NCBI RefSeq assembly: GCF_003704095.1
Contig: NW_020846501.1
Span: 496,001-560,000 of the forward strand
Direction of reading: 5' to 3'
DNA: 64,000 bases
DNA from: Pocillopora damicornis
Lineage: Eukaryota
Shown here: piece after piece, positions 1-64,000 of the stretch
How the letters are laid out: every line of letters starts with the position of its first letter
Position numbering within the stretch: the stretch's first letter is position 1
The notes under the pieces: model-generated
The model's input: only the letters and a program-made list of their open reading frames with translations
Databases searched by the model: none
What the model was told of the DNA's origin: nothing
Program-made: the position numbers and the translations under genes

Positions 1-3000
1 AGCCAGAATTCCAACAAGAGCTTAGCAACAGCGATGTCTTTGTTGGGGATACTGTATACTTTACTGTCAAGTCAAGGGGCATACCGGAACCGAAAGTCTC
101 ATGGTACAGGAACGGAGAGCTCGTGAAGGAAGACTCTCGAGTGAAGTTTATCAAAGATTCGCAGAGTGGAAACTATTCCCTTCTTATCAACAAAGTGACC
201 GTGGAGGACGAGGGCGAGTATCGTTGTGTGGCTTCCAACATGGGGGGATCTGTTGCCTGTCAAGCAAAACTTTTGGTTAAAGGTAAATGTCAAAGGGTAA
301 TGTGCATGGTGCCAAATCATAGAATTTTGTTTTGGGGTTATGTGCCTCAAGTATTCCTCAAATGATAATTCGTTGAAGTTTATGATGACTTTGAAGAGAC
401 ATTGTATTAAAATTGTCTTTTCAAAGACAAAATAAAGACGCTTCTGATGTTCGGTAGCACGTCGACATAACTCAGAATGAACAGACATGGAATAGCAAGT
501 CCGATGTTTTTATTGAAATTTTTTATTATATCCAATGCAAACAAATGTCGTGTTAGTGAAAGAAACTGGACCAGACCTCCATTTAGTGACTGAATATTGC
601 ATTTGCTTTCCCTCAGGGCATAATCAAGATGAAGCGCCTTCATTCACAGCGCCGCTGACCGATCGCTCTATCGAAGATAGCAGTGCAGCTAGGTTTGATG
701 TGCGTGTGCGCGGAAAACCTGCTCCAACAGTCTCTTGGTATAAAGACGGAAAAGAGATCAGTGATGAACAGTTTCCACACATCAAAGTTTTGCAGGAGGA
801 AGACTTGTTCTCTATTCTGATAACAGAAGGCAAGTTTGAAGATGCTGGAACGTATAAAGTGGTCGCCAAAAACGTTCTGGGAGAAGTGTCTTCTACTGGA
901 ATGTTATTTGTTGAAGGTGTGTAAGGTAGATTGTGTAGTAACTAGGATTGTTTAAGATATATGAGAAGTAGGAGTACCTCAGAATTAGGCTGCGAATAGT
1001 ATTTGGAACTTTTTATTTCCGAGGAAATCATCTTTGCACCGCACAAAAACATGCAATTTTTCTTTTAAAAATTACCCGTACTTTCCAGACCACAATTTTA
1101 CAGTCTTGAGGAAACAACTGATACTAAGATGTGCAGCGCCATATAAATTTCAGCCCATTTCAGCACCTAAATTTGTTGATTATCTGAAAATTCTTTCTTT
1201 GAAGGGAAACTCTGCTCACTTTTTTATTCATACCCTTTAAGATTAAAGAAAGAGCTAATTCGTTTCCTTCATTTTAGGAGCCGATCAGCTGCCACCCTTT
1301 GCTGGAGGAAAACCTCCGCGTAAGAACTCAGGCCTCTCAAGAGTTGAAGAGGTGAGAGTTTGATTAACCCTTTACACTCAACGTCAATATGCATATTGCA
1401 TATGTATACCAGTATATGTTTATCAGTATATGTCTACCAGTATATGTACAACGGTATATGTATATCCGTATTTGTATATCAGTATATGTTTATCAGTATA
1501 TGTACATTGGTATATGTATATCAGTATACATATTCACAATTCTGTTATTTTTACATTCCTTTTCTTGGCACTAGCAAGGAGAAGGTGTTTAACAGTTGAT
1601 GATCAGTTACTTTATTCTCATGACCTTAATGTTTGATTCAGGGCCGAGACTGTGTGGAGAAATTAGATGCTAGTCACCTTAAGGGGTTAAAGGGAAGAAG
1701 GAGTCGATATTCATAGATTAGGGAATTTTGAGAGAAGTTATATACACATACTAAATATTAGGTCAATCAGTGTTTGGTCCATAATTCATCTTGAGAGAAG
1801 ATTTCATCTTCCCTAAAAAAAAAAATTATTTTAAGTCACTGAAGAGTTATAGAAAACTTTAGTGCATAAATCTTTGTGAAGATAATACTTGGTTATATCA
1901 TAGTTTTATTCCCTCACTTGCTTCCCAGGTTCTGACGCTCAAGCTGTACACAGCCATTGAGGACTTCTATTCGGAAGAGACTGGAAACAAATTTCTTAAG
2001 AGGGGCGACAAAGTTGAAGTACTAGATACAAGCCGACCTGAGTTCTGGCTGGTCAGACGAGTGTCACGTGGGTCAGAGATTGGATTTGTACGTCACACAT
2101 GCCTGAAAAGAGACGAAGACGGGTAAGAGTACATTAAGATTGGTCACATGTTTAACTTGATTTTAGTTTTCAGCTTGATGGGTTATTACTGGCTTTCTTA
2201 GCGTACAAAGACGGCATATACGGCTCAAAAAGTTGCCTTGATGTCTTTCATTCGACTCATCACTAAGTCGATTTTCTCAGGATGATTACTAAAGCGGTGA
2301 CGGCCGTCAGTTAAGTTGCACAAAAATTTTGAATTAATGCAACTAATCGATACTTTACTTTTCAGGGATGAAACCACAGACGCACCGGTGATAGTAAGTT
2401 TTTTTAATTTCTCCTTTTACAACATGGAGATTGTTTTTAACTTTCTTCTTCCTTACTTTATTCTGATTTTAAAATTCATAAGTTTTGGCCCTTTTTTCAG
2501 GGAGAGAAACAAAAGTTTGTATGTATCACCAACTACACGGCCCAGTCCCCCGATGAGGTCTCGGTAAATGAGGGTGACATGTTAGAGATCCTTGACGACG
2601 TAGGCATGGAGAACTCGATGGTCTGCGTTATTCCTACCGGCGCCGTCGGGTGGTTACCAAGGGTCTTTATCATAAGGGCCCCTGAAGAGGATGTGAAGAA
2701 GGCCCCAAAGACTGCTAAAGGGAAAGAGAGGGAAGCACTTAATCAGCGAGAGTAAGTGAAGAATTGTTGAGAATGTTTGGTGTCAATTTCCTCCCTACAG
2801 TACAAATGAAGCTTCGAGAATTTTTCAATTATCTTTGATGGACTAAATATCTTACACTACGATTTGCTCTCATAGATTCGTGCTTAACGAATTGATAGAA
2901 TCTGAAAGGCAGTATGTTAACGACCTTCGAACTGTTGTTGAGGTAAGGAACAGATGACTTTCTATGAGTTTGATATCAAAGGTGATATGAATCCTGTTTA

Positions 3001-6000
3001 ACAATCAGTTAGTTTGGTGTGTCGGGGTTTTCTTACCTTAATAAATTACATCAACCAAAAGCTGTGCTGAGAAACACCTGTGATGCACAAGCATTTTATA
3101 TAGGCGTAATTGTTCTACCGGAGCTGCAGACTTCCGTATTTGATAATAAATTTTACCTTCGCTTAGCCCCCTCCCCCCTCCTGTATTTGCTAAATCTCTT
3201 TTTGTCGTGATTTGTTGTCACTGAATATACAAGAAACCGCTCACGTGAAGGATGATCTGTTTCGTGTGGTTTGTACAGAGTCACCTAGCTGAACTTGATG
3301 CTGCTGATATTCCTGAAGAAGTTGTTGAACATGAGGATGTTGTGTTTTCCAATATCAAGGAAATATACGGATTTCACACAAGGTATTAATTTCATGCTAC
3401 TCTTTCCTCTAACTCTCTCCGACTCACGTCATTTAATATGCCATTGCTCTGCTGCAATAGAATTACATATTTGTAGTCTGCGTGGAGTTGAACCGTTGAC
3501 TTTTGGAAGGTGAAATACGTCACAGTTAAGCATCCCGCTAAAACACTTGCTATTCGTTGTTTGTTATTGTCTCTCTGATGATATATCCATTCTTTCTTCA
3601 GACTATTCTTGCACGAACTGGAGGCTTGTGCAAAGAGTCCAGATGACGTTCCAAAGGTTATTGTACGACACGTAAGTTGCATTGCCGTAAAACATATGAA
3701 ATATTTTTAGTTAGTCTCTCTCCTCGACACTAAGTTATCTTTGTACACTTGGCTTCGTTATAACCTTCAATATGAATACGAGCAACATCTTGATTATATC
3801 TGTTGCTATTTTCGTGTAATTTTTAGAAACCAAAATTTGAAATGTACATCAAGTTCCTCGAGGGAAGGCCGCTGGCAAACGAAAAGCTGGAGAGTGAGAA
3901 AACGCAAGAGTTTTGGACGGTGAGTATTCCTCTTAAATAATCACTTTCGTTAATAAGATTTCATTCCGGTGGTTCACTTGTACAGAGATTAATTTACATG
4001 GATAATATGCGAAAAAAAAACCCACGCCAATTGCATTTTTAGTTTGAAGTACATTTAATGTTTTTAAAAAAATTTGAATATTAACTGTTTTTAAACTAAT
4101 GCTAGTTCACCTTTTTGCCGAATCTTTTGAACAATAATTATTCCAACATCAACAGGAGTTCCAAGAAGACACGAAAGATGCCATCTCTCTCTCAGAGTAC
4201 CTTAAAAAACCAGCACAGCGCCTTGATGAATACGTCCTGCATCTTAAGGTTAGAGAGAATGATCGCTAATACCTAGTACCTAACATTGATTTGGAGTACA
4301 GAAGTCTTTGCTAAGTTGTGCTGAGAGCCCCTTTTTCAAATACTTAAACTTTTTTCGTATTTTTATATACTACCTTCTGGTGCTGTTTTTATTTTTGTTT
4401 TTATTTTTTATAGTTATATATTTATATATTTTTTACGTCTAGTCTTTTGTATCGGTATGCATCCAGGCGAAGGGAAAATCGATGTACATTCTAAGCGGTG
4501 TTAATTTTATTTTTACCAAAGGAATTGCTCAAGTTCACTGTACGTGCGAATCTGCAGCATTCGGATTTTCAGGTAAGTCCCTTGTCTTTTTATTAAGCCA
4601 CAATTGACTCTGCCAAGATAAACCCAGTCAACGGTGGTTTCAATAGGACTAGAAAGAAATACAATGGTCATCACTAATCATCGGGACTCTTGCATAAACC
4701 TGATCACGTCGATAAGAGTTTAAAAGAATAATTAACTGTCGTATTCCCTCTGTCAGGTTCTTAACCCATCCCCTCACCCCACATCCCCCAATCCCCCCCT
4801 TCCTCGAAAGGAACATCGGTACGGAGGAGGGCATTGAACTTGTAAAGACCATACTTTTTACGTCTTCCAACGATTTGAAGTTCATAACTCCATTTTTTAT
4901 CTTCTCAACAGACGGCTCTTGAATTCCTAGCCAGTCTATCCCGACGAGGAAATGAAGCAGCACAAAAATTCCACATCGAAGGATATAATGTGAGTAATTA
5001 ACTCGACGCTCAAAAAATGCGATTCTTGAACTCCCCCGATCAGTCACCACCACCTGTGCAAACATCTACATCTTTCTCCTTTCACTGTGTGTATGTATTT
5101 TTTTTTTCTTTTTTTTTGCAAATATAATATTTATCCATGGTACTTATGTCCCACGTTCGTTTGCATTGTGTTAAATTTTTTTTTCCGTCACTGACTAGCT
5201 GACCAACAGAACGACGAACGGATAGACAGACCGACTGATGTATTGACTTACTCACTGACCGTCTGACGGACAGCCTTACTTGATTCACAAGAAAATTATC
5301 CAATGTTATTTCCTTATTGGTTTATTTGTCAATCTGCAGGGTGAGGTTCCTCTTGAAAATCTAGGGAGACTAATCCGCCAGGTAAGCTTCGTAAAGACCT
5401 TCATATAAATCTTCTCTGTTTACATGAAGTATTGAAGATGTTGTGCGTCTTATTTTGCAGGAGGTGGTCTTATTCTGGGAAGAGAAAGCTCGAGGAAAAG
5501 GAAAAGAACGGGACTTGTTCTTGTTCGAGAAAGGAATCGTCAACACGAAAAGAAAAGAAGGAGGAAGAAAATTCATCTTTAAAAACATGCTGAAGGTTTG
5601 ATATAACGACTGTTTGAACTTTCAAGTCCCCATCGATATTTTGTCCAACAGGTTACAAATAGAAACAATTAGAAACAAGGCCCGAGCCATGCTGTAATCA
5701 CAACCCTTACTTTGTTTTACTTTTCCGCTTTCATCCTCTTCGTTGTTTTTTATTTTTACTTGCTATAAGGTTGATCATAAGATTTATTGTTGTAATTTAA
5801 GAACTGAAACTCATTCCATCATGTGTTTAAGTAACTACTTGATAACACGGTTCTGTTGTCGTTCATTAAAATTGTCACTTAATAAGCCACACTCTTATTC
5901 TTTAGCTGACAAGTGGTAATGTTGGTCTGACTGAACATGTTGAAGGAGGTGCCCGTCAGTTCATGGTGTGGGTGGGTACCTCCATGGCCACTGCTCTTGT

Positions 6001-39538: not shown

Positions 39539-40721
39539 AACAAAAAAACTTCCTCAAAACCAATGTACAAAGATGCCGTAACTCTTAAGAGGAAACCAAA
39601 ATATAGGAGATAGCAAGATTTGGTCAAAAGGAAATGAGACCTAAGTGAGACTGTCGTTTTTCTTAACGAGCTGGTTCTCGAAGAAAGAGCGCTTTATAGA
39701 AGAAAGAAAGAGATACGAGAATAACAGACAAATCTCAGAAACATTTTTGTATTTCTTAGTGGATTGGGAATAAAGTTTCTTTGACCACTCCCGATAGTGG
39801 AGAGATTTGGACTGTTGATTTAAAACTTGCACGTAGGATAAAGAAAGTGTCACTCTTCTTTTTTATTGATCATTGACGGTTTGATTGTTGATTTTAAATC
39901 GTTTGAGGCTACATGTACGTTAACTTTAAAACAAACTTCAACTTGATGCATAATTATTATTGATGAGCCCCAGTGGAGCGAAATATGATTGCATTCTGGT
40001 GTATGTCAATTAAAAGTCGTGCGAACCTCGTTAACAATCGCTGACCAAGATGAATGCTGACACAGGCGCACCATTGGGTTACTGACCGTCTTAGCGTTTT
40101 CTTGAATAACCTAGATATGCTTTCGTATCAAATGGCTTGTTTTGATGAACCCGACAAATTTTAGCCTCTTTGTGGATACTGTGGACGCTTATTCGCACGT
40201 GCTTGAGAAATTCTCGCCATTTGTGATAAGCTCAAATCCATTCAAATAAAAACAAATCTTTGTGTTTTTATACACAAAATTATTAATTAGTTACATATTT
40301 CTATTTTTAAATTTTAGTCCTATTATCAAAGCAGAATTAGATTAGCGCATTTACACTAAGTTTTTCCAAATAGTTCCCTATTAATTTATAAATCATCATT
40401 GTCACCAACAGTGGATTAAAATGTCCTTCAAATTCTTGCTGACGCGTCTCCAGGTATGAAAGTTATTGGCGACGGTGAGCGTGAAATTGTGCTTTAGAAC
40501 AGCCTGAATTAACGCGAGCTTACCCCTTAAACTCTAATAATAACTTCGAACTGCTATAGATGATACTGTCACAATATCTTAGAAGAACTTACCTCTAGCT
40601 CTGTCCGTACTCGCAAAATTGTCTCATGTGATGGCTAGCTTGCTCTCGATTTGTGTAGCTAGTAAAAGAAAATAAACCGCTCGAGTAACCAGTCAGCGGT
40701 TCACTTCAAGAATCAACCAAC

Positions 40722-60869: not shown

Positions 60870-61396
60870 CCTAGTTTGTCCAAAGCCTGCTTTCTTTCAC
60901 ACCATTGTCCAAAGTACAAGCAAGGAGAGCAAAATGGTACCTAAGCAAACATAAAGGGTTATGGAAAAGAGAACATAGAAACATTTTTTCTTCTGCTCTA
61001 TGCCTGTTCCTGGGATGTTCTTGACTATGAAGGAAAAAACCTACAGGGTAATGTACAGATGTATAAGTGTCTTCTGAACCTGAGATGGCTACTGAGGAAG
61101 AATTGAAGAGAAAGGAAAAAGTAAAACAAAAGAAAGCATGGCACTGACAGCAATCAGTTGTCTGAAGCCAACTTCTGTTGAGCTACATGCATTATACTGT
61201 TTTATTTATTTCCAACAATTTATTCCATAGAGAAATTTATTCAACATTCATTCATTAATTCTTGTTTTTTTTTTCATCATTAGAAAACCACTCTCTAAAT
61301 ACTTAAATTAGCTCAGCATTGTGTGTTGCCATATTTCAGATGTGTTTTTCACAGTAACAAATTCTGCACAAAATCACAAAACAATAATAACTTGAG

Positions 61397-64000
61397 TTAA
61401 AGTTTCTGTTTAAGCCCATCAATATTCAGCACTTTACTCCTCTCCTGTTCACTGTTAAGGATTCTTGACAGCCTGGTGTGCATGTTTTCAAGGGTCTTGG
61501 GTGAAATCTTTGTCAACAGGTTTAACTCTTGGATCCAGTGGTGTTGAATCTCTTTCTTTTGAAGTGCATCCCTCAAAAAGGTCACAAAACCTGTAAAATG
61601 CTCTGCTAAGCTGTCTTGACCCCAGTCACTGGTTGTTTTGTTGTACCAGAGTAGACCCATTTTGAGATGGAATGATGTTAAAGGTGAAAATGTTGCTTCT
61701 TTGTGGAGAACTGTGCTTACCACTTTAAACAAGCTGTGCCGACAACCATGGTCTTTGTCCATGTCTTTAAGGAGGGCCTTCTGCATTAAGGTGTATGACT
61801 TGATCCAGGCTGTGTCCTGGACCACACCCACTGGTAAATGACTGGGTTGAGAAGATGGTGGAACAAAATACTCACTGCCAAGTTGAAATGTTGGCACAAA
61901 CTGAACCTCCAAAGCCTTTGACTGCTCACGCATGCAAACTTTCACACTACTGGAGTTTGAAGCTTTCAAAGACATTGTTGAAGCTCCTTCACTATTAATA
62001 TTCTGCACAGCACTGGTAACTAGCTTGAAAAGCCAGTTTTGGAATTTTACAGGCATAAGGAAACCATCTGGATTGGAAAACTCTTTGTAAGGAGAATCTT
62101 CTGTTGCCTTTATACCTGCATATCCTGCATCATTTACTTCAAAATCAATGAGGCTGTTTTTTGCGTTCAAGGCAAGGAAGATAACAGCATCATCAGCATC
62201 GGAATGTGTGGTTTTCAAATTTTCATACAAACTTCCACCATATTCAAACTTACTAATGAGATCAGATTTCTCCATGCAGCATTTCAGCACTCCATCTTTC
62301 ACAACCTGCTCCACAATTTCCTTACACCACTTTGTATCTTCACTGAGAATTGTGCCCAGGCTGTCAAGGAATCTTCGCAAGACTTGCAAAAGATCTGTAG
62401 AAGTTTGTGGCATATTGGGTTGACATAGCTTTGGTTTCCCTGGTGATGTGACTGGACAGTTTTCAACTCCATTGCCATTTGTAGTCATTGGAACTGTGAC
62501 TGAATAAAAAGTTCTGTTTTTTAATATGCCATGTTAATTTTTCCAAACTTTAGATCCTGGAAAAATTAAATTAGATAGGTCTCTGACCACCATACAATCT
62601 TTTGTCCTACAAATGTCAACTATTGTTATTGCTGAGTACCACACAGACTCCAAGTGATTAATAAGTAACTTCTCCTTCTAATATCCATGGAATATTCAGC
62701 CAGCTGGTGTTAAGAATATTCAAACTTATCAGGTACAAGTTGTTATCAGATCTAACATCAAATTCTCATAACTAATTTACAAGGAAATCTGTAGCAGCTG
62801 GAGGGGAGAATTACCTTCAGATTTTGGGAATTAAAGGGTTCAGATGGCTAGGAATGAGTGAGGGGTACCACACATATATTATTTTTTTGTACAGAAGATT
62901 CTTATATGTTAAGACCCAAGGTTATCTCACAGGTAAAAAATGATAAAAGCAGAAACCAATCAAAGAGACACTTACTGTTACATTTAAGGACTTTATTCCT
63001 TTCTTTGTCACTATCCAAAATCCTGCGCAGCCTACAAGCCATGTTTTCCAGAGTTTTACCAGGTACATTTTCCAAGAGGTTGACCCCTTCAATCCAGAAG
63101 TGATCCAGAATCTTGCTATTTACTGCAGCATAGAGCAACTCCAAGTACTCAATAAACCTCTCCCCAAGCATGTCTTTATCCCATGAAACCTTTGCATTAG
63201 TGTTGTACCTCAAAAATACTGTTTTTAAATGGTAACTTGTCAGTTTAGCAAAAGTTGCCTCTCCTCTAATGATGCTTTTGATAATTCGGAGAAGTTCATG
63301 TCTACAACCACCATCCTCTTTATCCATTTCTTGCAGTCTTGCTTTCTCCTTCAGTGAGAATGACTGTCGCCAGAGAAGCTTGCAATCACAGGTGGCAGCC
63401 GTGTTCCCTGTATAGGATTTTGCCACAAAGTAGTCCATGGCACCAATCCTAAATGTTGGGACCAAATCAGCAGACAGCTTCTTTCCCAAGTTGCTGTCTG
63501 TGATATCAAGCTGAACGGCTGGGCCATGCGCTCTAACCTCCATCTGAACTGGTAAAGCAAGTTCATTAACTGCCTTCTGAACAAGGCCAAAGAACCAACT
63601 TGCTCGCAGCTTCTCAGGGACAAGATAACCATCTGTGTCTGTATACTTCTTTAGTGGTGAACCATCTTTTGATACCTTTAACAGAACAAAACCAGGGACC
63701 CCAGCATCCTCTTGTATCACTTCCTGTTTGGCAGTCTGTAATACTACCATGACATCCACCTCATCAGCTGCTTCAGTTTTAAGTCTCTCATACAGGCTTC
63801 CTGTGTATTCTAGCTTACTGATGGACAGGGGTTGTGAATTGTTAAAGATGTACTGTAATACACCATTTTCTAAGTAACTGTCTACCAGACGCTTAGCTTG
63901 ATCAGTATCCTCTTTATTTATTTTCACATGGTCTGCAGAGAATCGCCTCAGCTGTTGAGTGAGCCCTGCAGTTTTGTCCAAGTTTAGTTTGGCTTGAAGC
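61397..64000 (-). CDS. Tandem cGAS-like receptor (two Mab-21/cGAS nucleotidyltransferase domains), 5'-partial
   Basis: Domain 1 exon >64000-62976 is open to the window edge (YTGSLYERLKTEAADEVDVM, SADLVPTF, WRQSFSLKEK, LTSYHLKT). A phase-1 intron 62975-62500 (A|gtaagt ... tttttattcag|TC) joins it in frame to exon 62499-61397 (YGGSLYENLK, EVQFVPTF, LTSFHLKM, NLL). Minus-strand AATAAA cluster at about 61201-61241. Confidence 0.88.
62645..62842 (-). mobile_element. TTAA-type MITE family 2 copy in the cGLR intron
   Basis: AAGTTGTTATCAGATCTAACATCAAATTCTCATAACTAATTTACAAGGAAA is the reverse complement of the core of the 43464 copy; ends TTAAAGGGTTCA. Confidence 0.65.

What the first reader, a model, noticed from the sequence alone, without database searches (positions are those of the whole stretch)
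61397..64000. Single-chain tandem cGAS-like receptor: an intact cyclase fused to a predicted pseudo-cyclase
Seen: the two Mab-21 ORFs look like one gene. A gtaagt donor after ...VLKCN (62976) and a tttttattcag acceptor (62499) form a phase-1 intron that joins them in frame through a Pro/Thr/Gly linker. Domain 1 keeps the full cGAS-type triad (GS..E-V-D, then SADLVP; compare human cGAS TGSYYE..NEFDVM and VDIT). Domain 2 has Gln at the third acidic position (EVQFVPTF vs SADLVPTF) and a distorted first motif (SDADDAVIF; the alignment here is ambiguous). Neither domain has the vertebrate Zn-thumb. Established: cGAS is activated as a nucleic-acid-bridged dimer, and OAS2/OAS3 use catalytically dead duplicate domains for dsRNA binding and length sensing. 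Inference: this is a covalently pre-assembled active/inactive cGLR pseudo-dimer, with the dead domain acting as ligand sensor or allosteric regulator, in the opposite order to OAS3. More domains may lie beyond the window.
Basis: partly seen in the sequence, partly recalled or inferred. Interest (0 to 1): 0.88.

Follow-up and report, generated by a model that had tools for sequence, protein, structure and literature searches.

The report
Coral tandem cGAS-like receptor gene
This is one expressed coral gene that joins an apparently active cGAS-like immune enzyme domain to a conserved but catalytically crippled copy of itself; published work has already catalogued this architecture and this gene's orthologs, but nobody has tested it biochemically.

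Summary
RNA contigs from four independent studies skip exactly window 62500-62975 (GT..AG on the minus strand). One 2412-nt contig carries a 5'UTR exon, exon 2 and exon 3. The two Mab-21 ORFs are therefore one mRNA, encoding 709 aa. The ATG lies at window 64002, behind an in-frame TAA, so no further domains lie upstream.

- **Domain 1** keeps G-S / E-V-D / D. This is invariant in five hexacoral species.
- **Domain 2** has Ala at the first acidic position and Gln at the third. The third position is never acidic in its clade (Q in corals, C/N/I in anemones).

Both domains fold as cGAS (Z 32.7 and 28.9). dN/dS is 0.18 for domain 1, 0.29 for domain 2 and 0.78 for the linker. The duplication predates the stony coral/anemone split.

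A rigid pre-assembled pseudo-dimer is not supported: the linker is predicted disordered, pTM is 0.50, and the complex test gave no verdict.

Novelty is limited. Li et al. 2023 already describe multi-cGLR domain fusions as similar to OAS2 and OAS3, and their Table S2 lists orthologs of this gene with two Mab-21 hits. What this work adds is that domain 2 is a degenerate site kept under selection, and that the active domain comes first, the reverse of the OAS order.

The parts
62976..64000 (-). Exon 2, coding for cGLR domain 1. In full it runs to window 64012, with the ATG at 64002, just outside the window. Codons 1-342 plus the first base of codon 343.
   Evidence: ORF and sequence. RNA contig pieces L004 2976-4012. 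Pfam Mab-21 4e-21 and Mab-21_C 6e-17.
63754..63762 (-). Domain 1 catalytic E81-V82-D83, with G68-S69 just upstream at 63801-63796.
   Evidence: Sequence. Aligned to the E-F-D of cGLR1 structure 8gjy. Invariant in 5 species.
63466..63468 (-). Domain 1 third catalytic Asp (D179).
62500..62975 (-). Phase-1 GT..AG intron of 476 nt. It contains a roughly 190-bp interspersed repeat at about 62652-62893.
   Evidence: Joint 2499->2976 in 4 RNA runs from 4 studies. Repeat copies across the genome.
62389..62499 (-). Inter-domain linker, about residues 339-372 (it begins in the last codons of exon 2). Rich in Pro/Thr/Gly/Asn and poorly conserved.
   Evidence: Linker identity 26-68% among orthologs and dN/dS 0.78. 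pLDDT about 30 in both models.
61400..62499 (-). Coding part of exon 3: linker plus cGLR domain 2, the pseudo-NTase. The stop codon is at 61397-61399.
   Evidence: ORF. Pfam Mab-21 2e-11 and Mab-21_C 3e-14. AlphaFold pLDDT 89.4, pTM 0.83. VIA Z 28.9 to mouse cGAS and 28.0 to MiD51.
62189..62200 (-). Domain 2 degenerate first motif D443-A444-D445-D446. Ala replaces the catalytic Glu, and the second Asp is kept.
61901..61903 (-). Domain 2 Gln542 at the position of the third catalytic Asp.
   Evidence: The position is Q in all coral orthologs and C/N/I in anemone relatives.
61205..61396 (-). 3'UTR with AATAAA signals. RNA contigs end at about 61205-61265.

Best explanation
**Shown.** A three-exon gene on the minus strand makes one spliced mRNA. 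The exons are a 5'UTR exon outside the window, exon 2 and exon 3. The mRNA encodes a 709-aa protein with two complete cGAS/Mab-21 folds, joined by a flexible linker of about 30-35 residues.

**Shown by sequence and evolution.**
- The N-terminal domain carries the complete nucleotidyltransferase site (G-S, E-x-D, D).
- The C-terminal domain arose by an ancient duplication of the same kind of domain.
- That domain has lost the first and third metal-binding carboxylates, yet it has been kept under purifying selection in stony corals and sea anemones.

**Inferred.**
- The protein is a cGAS-like receptor of the coral cGLR-STING network.
- Domain 1 makes the cyclic nucleotide signal.
- Domain 2 is a non-catalytic module that binds ligand, regulates or scaffolds on a flexible tether. 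This is functionally comparable to the dead domains of OAS2/OAS3, but with the active domain first.
- Which ligand it senses, and whether the two domains touch, is unknown.
For: **One mRNA.**
- The same GT..AG junction appears in RNA contigs of 4 studies.
- One 2412-nt contig covers the 5'UTR exon, exon 2 and exon 3.
- 16 RNA runs hold the stretch.
- A relative's RNA-derived contig, L006, has an uninterrupted 712-aa ORF with both domains.

**Domains and fold.**
- Pfam matches for both halves.
- VIA Z 32.7 for domain 1 (Stylophora ortholog model) and 28.9 for the window's domain 2, both to mouse cGAS.

**Active site.** Domain 1 has the triad invariant in 5 species. Domain 2 has A/G/E/S/E at the Glu position and Q/Q/Q/Q/C at the third Asp. 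In a 33-member family alignment the third Asp is missing almost only in the domain-2 clade.

**Conservation.**
- Proteins of about 710 aa with the same architecture occur in Stylophora, Oculina, Montipora and Actinia.
- The domain-1 and domain-2 clades each have 100/100 support.
- dN/dS is 0.18 for domain 1, 0.29 for domain 2 and 0.78 for the linker.

**Pathway context.** The literature counts 42 cGLRs and 5 STINGs in Pocillopora damicornis.
Against: - There is no biochemical evidence for either domain.
- Domain 2 keeps G-S, the second Asp and an extra acidic cluster (D-x-D-D), so residual or altered activity cannot be excluded from sequence.
- Domain 2 of this species has a near-neutral pI (6.6, against 8.2 for domain 1). 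The orthologs' domain 2 has pI 8.1-8.5. This gives no consistent charge signature for nucleic-acid binding.
- No inter-domain interface was predicted: pTM 0.50, and the complex test gave no verdict.
- Contigs cannot quantify isoforms. Low-depth contigs inside the intron leave room for an intron-retaining product of domain 1 alone.
Confidence: 0.6

Rival explanations
1. Domain 2 is a MiD51-like adaptor. It would be a Mab-21 fold that binds a nucleotide cofactor or a protein partner, for recruitment or localisation, rather than sensing nucleic acid or regulating domain 1 allosterically.
For: MiD51 structures tie with cGAS as the best structural matches for domain 2 (Z 28.0 vs 28.9). They are also top sequence hits. 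A source names the Stylophora ortholog MID51. Coral domain 2 keeps the S-F-H-L-K pocket motif.
Against: Domain 1 matches MiD51 about as well, so the resemblance is general to the fold. The Pfam MID51-like_C hit is below the cut-off and lies on domain 1. The tree places domain 2 within the hexacoral cGLR paralogs sampled rather than apart from them; no MiD sequence was included. Anemone domain-2 sequences have lost the aromatic residue of that motif.
Confidence: 0.2
2. Domain 2 is still an enzyme with a non-canonical site, so both domains would be catalytic.
For: G-S and the second Asp are retained. An acidic D-x-D-D cluster is conserved in the domain-2 clade. Purifying selection acts on it.
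Against: The position of the first carboxylate varies freely (A, G, E, S, D). The third is Q, C, N or I and never acidic. From established knowledge of cGAS/OAS-type nucleotidyltransferases, loss of the third Asp abolishes activity. The HGPAVQLDI strand motif of domain 1 is also lost in domain 2.
Confidence: 0.07
3. Domain 2 is a decaying, functionless duplicate that merely rides along on the transcript.
For: It evolves faster than domain 1 (35-84% vs 49-84% identity). It has a long stem branch.
Against: It has been kept intact, without stops, in five species spanning stony corals and anemones. dN/dS is 0.29 overall and 0.19 in its C-terminal half, against 0.78 for the linker. The predicted fold is confident.
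Confidence: 0.05
4. The two ORFs are mainly separate products, through intron retention, internal initiation or read-through assembly, and the fused protein is minor.
For: Low-depth contigs lie inside the intron. Exon 3 has an in-frame ATG four codons after the acceptor. Reading through the intron would stop after 24 more codons, giving a 366-aa product of domain 1 alone.
Against: The spliced contig has depth 52, against 2-3 for the intronic pieces, in X1. The same junction is present in all 4 runs. That ATG is not conserved in Oculina or Montipora. Fused proteins are annotated in four other species, and L006 has one open frame.
Confidence: 0.03

Closest known systems
Multi-cGLR domain fusions (tandem connected cGLR domains) catalogued by Li et al. 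2023, bioRxiv 10.1101/2023.02.22.529553 / PMC9980059
   Same: Two Mab-21/cGLR domains sit in one polypeptide. The paper makes the comparison to OAS2 and OAS3 explicitly. Orthologs of this very gene (Stylophora XP_022800603.1, Actinia XP_031556133.1) are in its Table S2 with two Mab-21 hits each; Orbicella XP_020610981.1 is listed there with the same two-hit layout (its orthology was not checked).
   Different: In the text I could read, the paper lists the architecture only. I found no statement that one domain is catalytically degenerate, no evolutionary analysis of it, and the two confirmed ortholog accessions (Stylophora, Actinia) were not found in its screening table (file 3). I did not find the Pocillopora product itself in the stored parts of the tables, which were cut.
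OAS2 and OAS3 (vertebrate tandem oligoadenylate synthetases)
   Same: Tandem nucleotidyltransferase-fold domains of which only one is catalytic. The dead domains are retained and used for dsRNA binding (established knowledge).
   Different: A different family: Pfam gives Mab-21, not OAS. The order is reversed, with the active domain N-terminal here and C-terminal in OAS2/OAS3. The product and ligand are unknown here.
cGAS and single-domain cGLRs (e.g. Cv-cGLR1 8gjw, cGLR1 8gjy, Tribolium cGLR 7lt2)
   Same: Same fold (Z 27-33). Domain 1 has the same G-S / E-h-D / D site.
   Different: No Zn-thumb insertion. The segment between the strand and the LWRxSF motif is short, and its Cys residues are not conserved among orthologs. 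A second, dead copy is covalently attached.
MiD51/MiD49 (catalytically dead Mab-21-fold adaptors)
   Same: Domain 2 is a Mab-21 fold without a full triad. Structural similarity is Z 28.0.
   Different: No N-terminal membrane anchor. Domain 1 is catalytically intact. In the tree, domain 2 sits within the hexacoral cGLR paralogs sampled; no MiD sequence was included, so separation from the MiD lineage was not tested.

Membership tests
cGAS-like receptor (cGLR; Mab-21 nucleotidyltransferase superfamily) | Mab-21 NTase core plus C-terminal helical (Mab-21_C) domain with a cGAS-like fold | tested here: met
   Pfam hits above cut-off for both halves. VIA Z 32.7 (domain 1, ortholog model) and 28.9 (domain 2, window sequence) to mouse cGAS.
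cGAS-like receptor (cGLR; Mab-21 nucleotidyltransferase superfamily) | Complete active site: G-S, [DE]-h-[DE], and a third [DE] | tested here: met
   Met for domain 1 only: G68-S69, E81-V-D83, D179, invariant in 5 species. Domain 2 fails this test: A444 and Q542.
cGAS-like receptor (cGLR; Mab-21 nucleotidyltransferase superfamily) | Ligand-stimulated synthesis of a cyclic di- or oligonucleotide that activates STING | not testable with these tools
   Needs biochemistry. Literature only: 5 STING and 42 cGLR genes counted in Pocillopora damicornis.
Multi-cGLR domain fusion (Li et al. 2023) | Two or more cGLR/Mab-21 domains encoded in one polypeptide | tested here: met
   Spliced RNA contigs join the two domains in frame. 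Orthologs are listed with two Mab-21 hits in Table S2.
OAS2/OAS3-type tandem synthetase | OAS-family domains (OAS1_C) | tested here: not met
   Pfam reports Mab-21 families only. It works like OAS2/3 at most by analogy.
OAS2/OAS3-type tandem synthetase | Only one domain catalytic, with the dead domain retained under selection | tested here: met
   by sequence and dN/dS only.
OAS2/OAS3-type tandem synthetase | The dead domain binds the nucleic-acid ligand | not testable with these tools
   pI values are inconsistent among orthologs. Needs binding assays.
MiD51/MiD49 | Catalytically dead Mab-21 fold with an N-terminal membrane anchor, belonging to the MiD lineage | tested here: not met
   Domain 1 has a full triad. 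MID51-like_C scores 18.6 bits against a cut-off of 27. The tree places both domains among hexacoral cGLR paralogs; no MiD sequence was in it. No hydrophobic anchor is seen at the N-terminus of the sequence.

The most novel reading that the evidence does not exclude
Domain 2 is a dedicated pseudo-enzyme sensor or regulator, conserved since before the coral/anemone split. It would make this a single-chain asymmetric cGLR, in which the tethered dead copy captures the ligand (or a nucleotide or cyclic dinucleotide) and gates the active N-terminal domain. That would replace the ligand-bridged dimerisation used by cGAS and would be an independent, order-reversed reinvention of OAS2/OAS3 logic.
Probability: 0.25. 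Interest if true: 0.65.

Novelty: new member of a known kind. Interest (0 to 1): 0.4.

Why it matters
Corals have dozens of cGLRs and several STINGs, and how those receptors gain ligand specificity is open. This tandem cGLR has a dead domain kept under selection since before the stony coral/anemone split. It is a clean, testable case of pseudo-enzyme use in the cGLR family, parallel to OAS2/OAS3.

It would not change the field's picture by its existence, because the architecture is already published. The active/dead asymmetry and its conservation give a concrete hypothesis for biochemical work.

Tried and rejected
- **Complex prediction of domain 1 with domain 2.** Score 0.00, no verdict. This counts neither for nor against contact.
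- **Full-length AlphaFold model of the Stylophora ortholog.** pTM 0.50 with a disordered linker, so no defined inter-domain geometry could be extracted.
- **The search of earlier findings by place and by words.** Nothing returned.
- **Looking for the Pocillopora product itself in Li et al.'s tables.** Not found in the stored, truncated parts. XP_027053370.1, which was in their screen, is a different protein.
- **Literature searches for functional work on tandem cGLRs.** Nothing beyond the catalogue statement.
- **Idea that more domains lie upstream.** Rejected.
- **Idea that the depth spike in the intron is an exon or an RNA gene.** Rejected: it is an interspersed repeat.
- **Joined protein not searched.** All database searches used each exon by reference, or natural orthologs returned by the tools. 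The joined coding sequence was built only inside local scripts, for translation, pI, alignment to orthologs, dN/dS and the tree.

Full report
**Where and what.** The window is G000:C3136:496001-560000 of a 234-Mb assembly with 4393 contigs. The RNA runs that hold the locus are labelled coral or marine metagenome, and the closest ortholog is from Stylophora pistillata at 84% identity. From memory, the assembly size and contig count fit Pocillopora damicornis; that naming is an inference. On the minus strand there are two long ORFs, 62902-63981 and 61397-62488. Each one matches both Pfam Mab-21 and Mab-21_C above the curated cut-offs. They are 37% identical to each other over their whole length.

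**Gene structure.**
- The sequence shows ...AAA TGT AAC A|gtaagt at 62976/62975 and tttttattcag|TC ACA at 62500/62499. This is a phase-1 intron of 476 nt that keeps the frame.
- I extended the contig (L004 = window minus 60000). The first ORF starts at an ATG at window 64002, two bases beyond the window. It is preceded by an in-frame TAA and a polypyrimidine-cag acceptor.
- Logan contigs of four RNA runs from four studies were laid on L004:1200-4800. X1, X5 and X6 skip exactly 2500-2975, with CT..AC on the + strand, which is GT..AG on the gene strand.
- X8 shows the same junction with a neighbouring SNP: three replaced letters that change ACA to GCA.
- A second joint, 4012->4565, defines a 5'UTR exon.
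- One X1 contig of 2412 nt covers the 5'UTR exon (4565-4702), exon 2 (2976-4012) and exon 3 (1265-2499).
- The gene is therefore a three-exon unit with a single 2130-nt reading frame and a 709-aa product. Nothing more lies upstream.
- The depth spike inside the intron is an interspersed repeat of about 190 bp, with thousands of candidate copies in the genome.
- Low-depth contigs in the intron leave room for a minor intron-retaining form. That form would stop after 24 further codons.

**Active sites.**

| Position | Domain 1 | Domain 2 |
|---|---|---|
| G-S | G68-S69 | G431-S432 |
| First acidic (Glu) | E81 | A444 |
| Second acidic (Asp) | D83 | D446 |
| Third acidic (Asp) | D179 | Q542 |

- The domain 1 residues align to G-S, E-F-D and V-D-L of the solved cGLR1 8gjy.
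- BLASTP against domain 1 and phmmer against 8gjy place the domain 2 residues the same way.
- In a 33-sequence family alignment the third Asp is present in nearly all members outside the domain-2 clade.

**Relatives.**
- A full HMMER scan of 1.8 billion representatives with domain 2 found 282 relatives. They include a 66%-identical domain-2 ORF (P0001) and two other tandem proteins.
- I used the natural tandem protein P0002 as query, so that the length filter admitted proteins of about 700 aa. This found same-architecture proteins of 708-719 aa in Oculina patagonica, Montipora capricornis, Stylophora pistillata and the anemone Actinia tenebrosa.
- In all five species domain 1 has G-S/E-V-D/D. 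Domain 2 has A/G/E/S/E at the Glu position and Q/Q/Q/Q/C at the third Asp. The anemone has also lost the Ser of G-S.
- Two further anemone domain-2 ORFs have N or I at the third position.
- A maximum-likelihood tree puts all domain-1 halves in one clade and all domain-2 halves in another, each with 100/100 support. Domain 2 sits on a long stem. The duplication and fusion therefore predate the stony coral/anemone split.
- Domain 1 is more conserved than domain 2 (49-84% vs 35-84% identity), and the linker is poorly conserved.
- I compared the window with a related species' transcript contig carrying an uninterrupted 712-aa ORF (L006). dN/dS is 0.18 for domain 1, 0.29 for domain 2 and 0.78 for the linker. 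Domain 2 is maintained, not decaying.

**Structure.**
- AlphaFold2 of the Stylophora ortholog, with a 28-sequence alignment, gives both domains at pLDDT about 90. The linker (357-391) is at about 30 and pTM is 0.50.
- The window's own domain 2 folds with pLDDT 89.4 and pTM 0.83.
- VIA-align gives Z 32.7 (rmsd 2.3 Å, 312 residues) for domain 1 and Z 28.9 (rmsd 2.9 Å, 303 residues) for domain 2, both against mouse cGAS. For domain 2, MiD51 (Z 28.0) and oyster Cv-cGLR1 (Z 27.5) are within the tie range.
- There is no Zn-thumb-like insertion. The corresponding segment is short and its cysteines are not conserved.
- The data fit two beads on a flexible tether. They neither show nor exclude a ligand-induced intramolecular pseudo-dimer.

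**Mechanism.** Domain 1 is most likely the cyclic-nucleotide synthase of a cGLR-STING pathway; the literature counts 42 cGLRs and 5 STINGs in P. damicornis. Domain 2 is most likely a retained non-catalytic module. Whether it binds nucleic acid, binds a nucleotide (MiD51-like) or regulates domain 1 cannot be decided here. Its pI is 6.6 in this species but 8.1-8.5 in the orthologs, while domain 1 is 8.2-9.0 throughout. Charge therefore gives no consistent hint.

**Comparison with what is known.**
- Li et al. [quoted passage not shown]
- Their Table S2 lists Stylophora XP_022800603.1 and Actinia XP_031556133.1 with two Mab-21 hits each. Both accessions belong to the ortholog clusters found here. 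Orbicella XP_020610981.1 is listed with the same layout; I did not check its orthology.
- The two ortholog accessions did not appear in their screening table. Four further literature searches found no functional work on tandem cGLRs.
- The architecture and the OAS analogy are therefore already published, and the gene is annotated in relatives.
- This analysis adds three things: the C-terminal copy is a degenerate site under purifying selection across Hexacorallia; the active domain is N-terminal, the reverse of OAS2/OAS3; and the linker is flexible.

**Verdict.** Novelty is modest: a new member of a known kind, with a useful and testable refinement.

Noticed in passing
window 62652-62893 (inside the intron): A roughly 190-bp interspersed repeat, SINE- or MITE-like. 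The first look found 2790 candidate copies in this genome, and the scored ones are 77-85% identical. It draws RNA contig depths in the thousands, with loose ends into many other contexts.
   Followed up: partly
G000:C2558:28618-97639 (another contig of the same genome): A cluster of at least nine single-exon Mab-21/cGLR-like ORFs, 29-38% identical to domain 2. One has an in-frame TAG (96650-97639). A C-terminal fragment (38190-38597) lies about 290 bp downstream of a full copy (38883-39875).
   Followed up: no
proteins P0002 (730 aa) and P0020 (871 aa): These are other tandem cGLRs in which both halves keep the full triad. The two halves of P0002 are 94% identical, which suggests a recent duplication or an assembly effect. 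The halves of P0020 are 54% identical and are separated by a Gly/Ala-rich hydrophobic stretch that looks like a membrane segment. Their halves pair with each other in the tree, so tandem fusion seems to have arisen more than once.
   Followed up: partly
window 62497 (first full codon of exon 3): Run X8 carries ACA>GCA (Thr344Ala) right after the acceptor. Many other differences among the RNA runs are listed at 95-99% likeness, so the runs probably come from different Pocillopora genotypes or species.
   Followed up: no
window 62528-62959 (intron): Low-depth RNA contigs (depth 2-3.5, against 52 for the exons in X1) lie within the intron. They could be pre-mRNA or a minor intron-retaining isoform that would end domain 1 after 24 extra codons.
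   Followed up: no
L004 8942-9550 (+), i.e. about 5 kb upstream of the gene, outside the window: A 202-aa ORF of unknown nature on the opposite strand. It was not examined.
   Followed up: no
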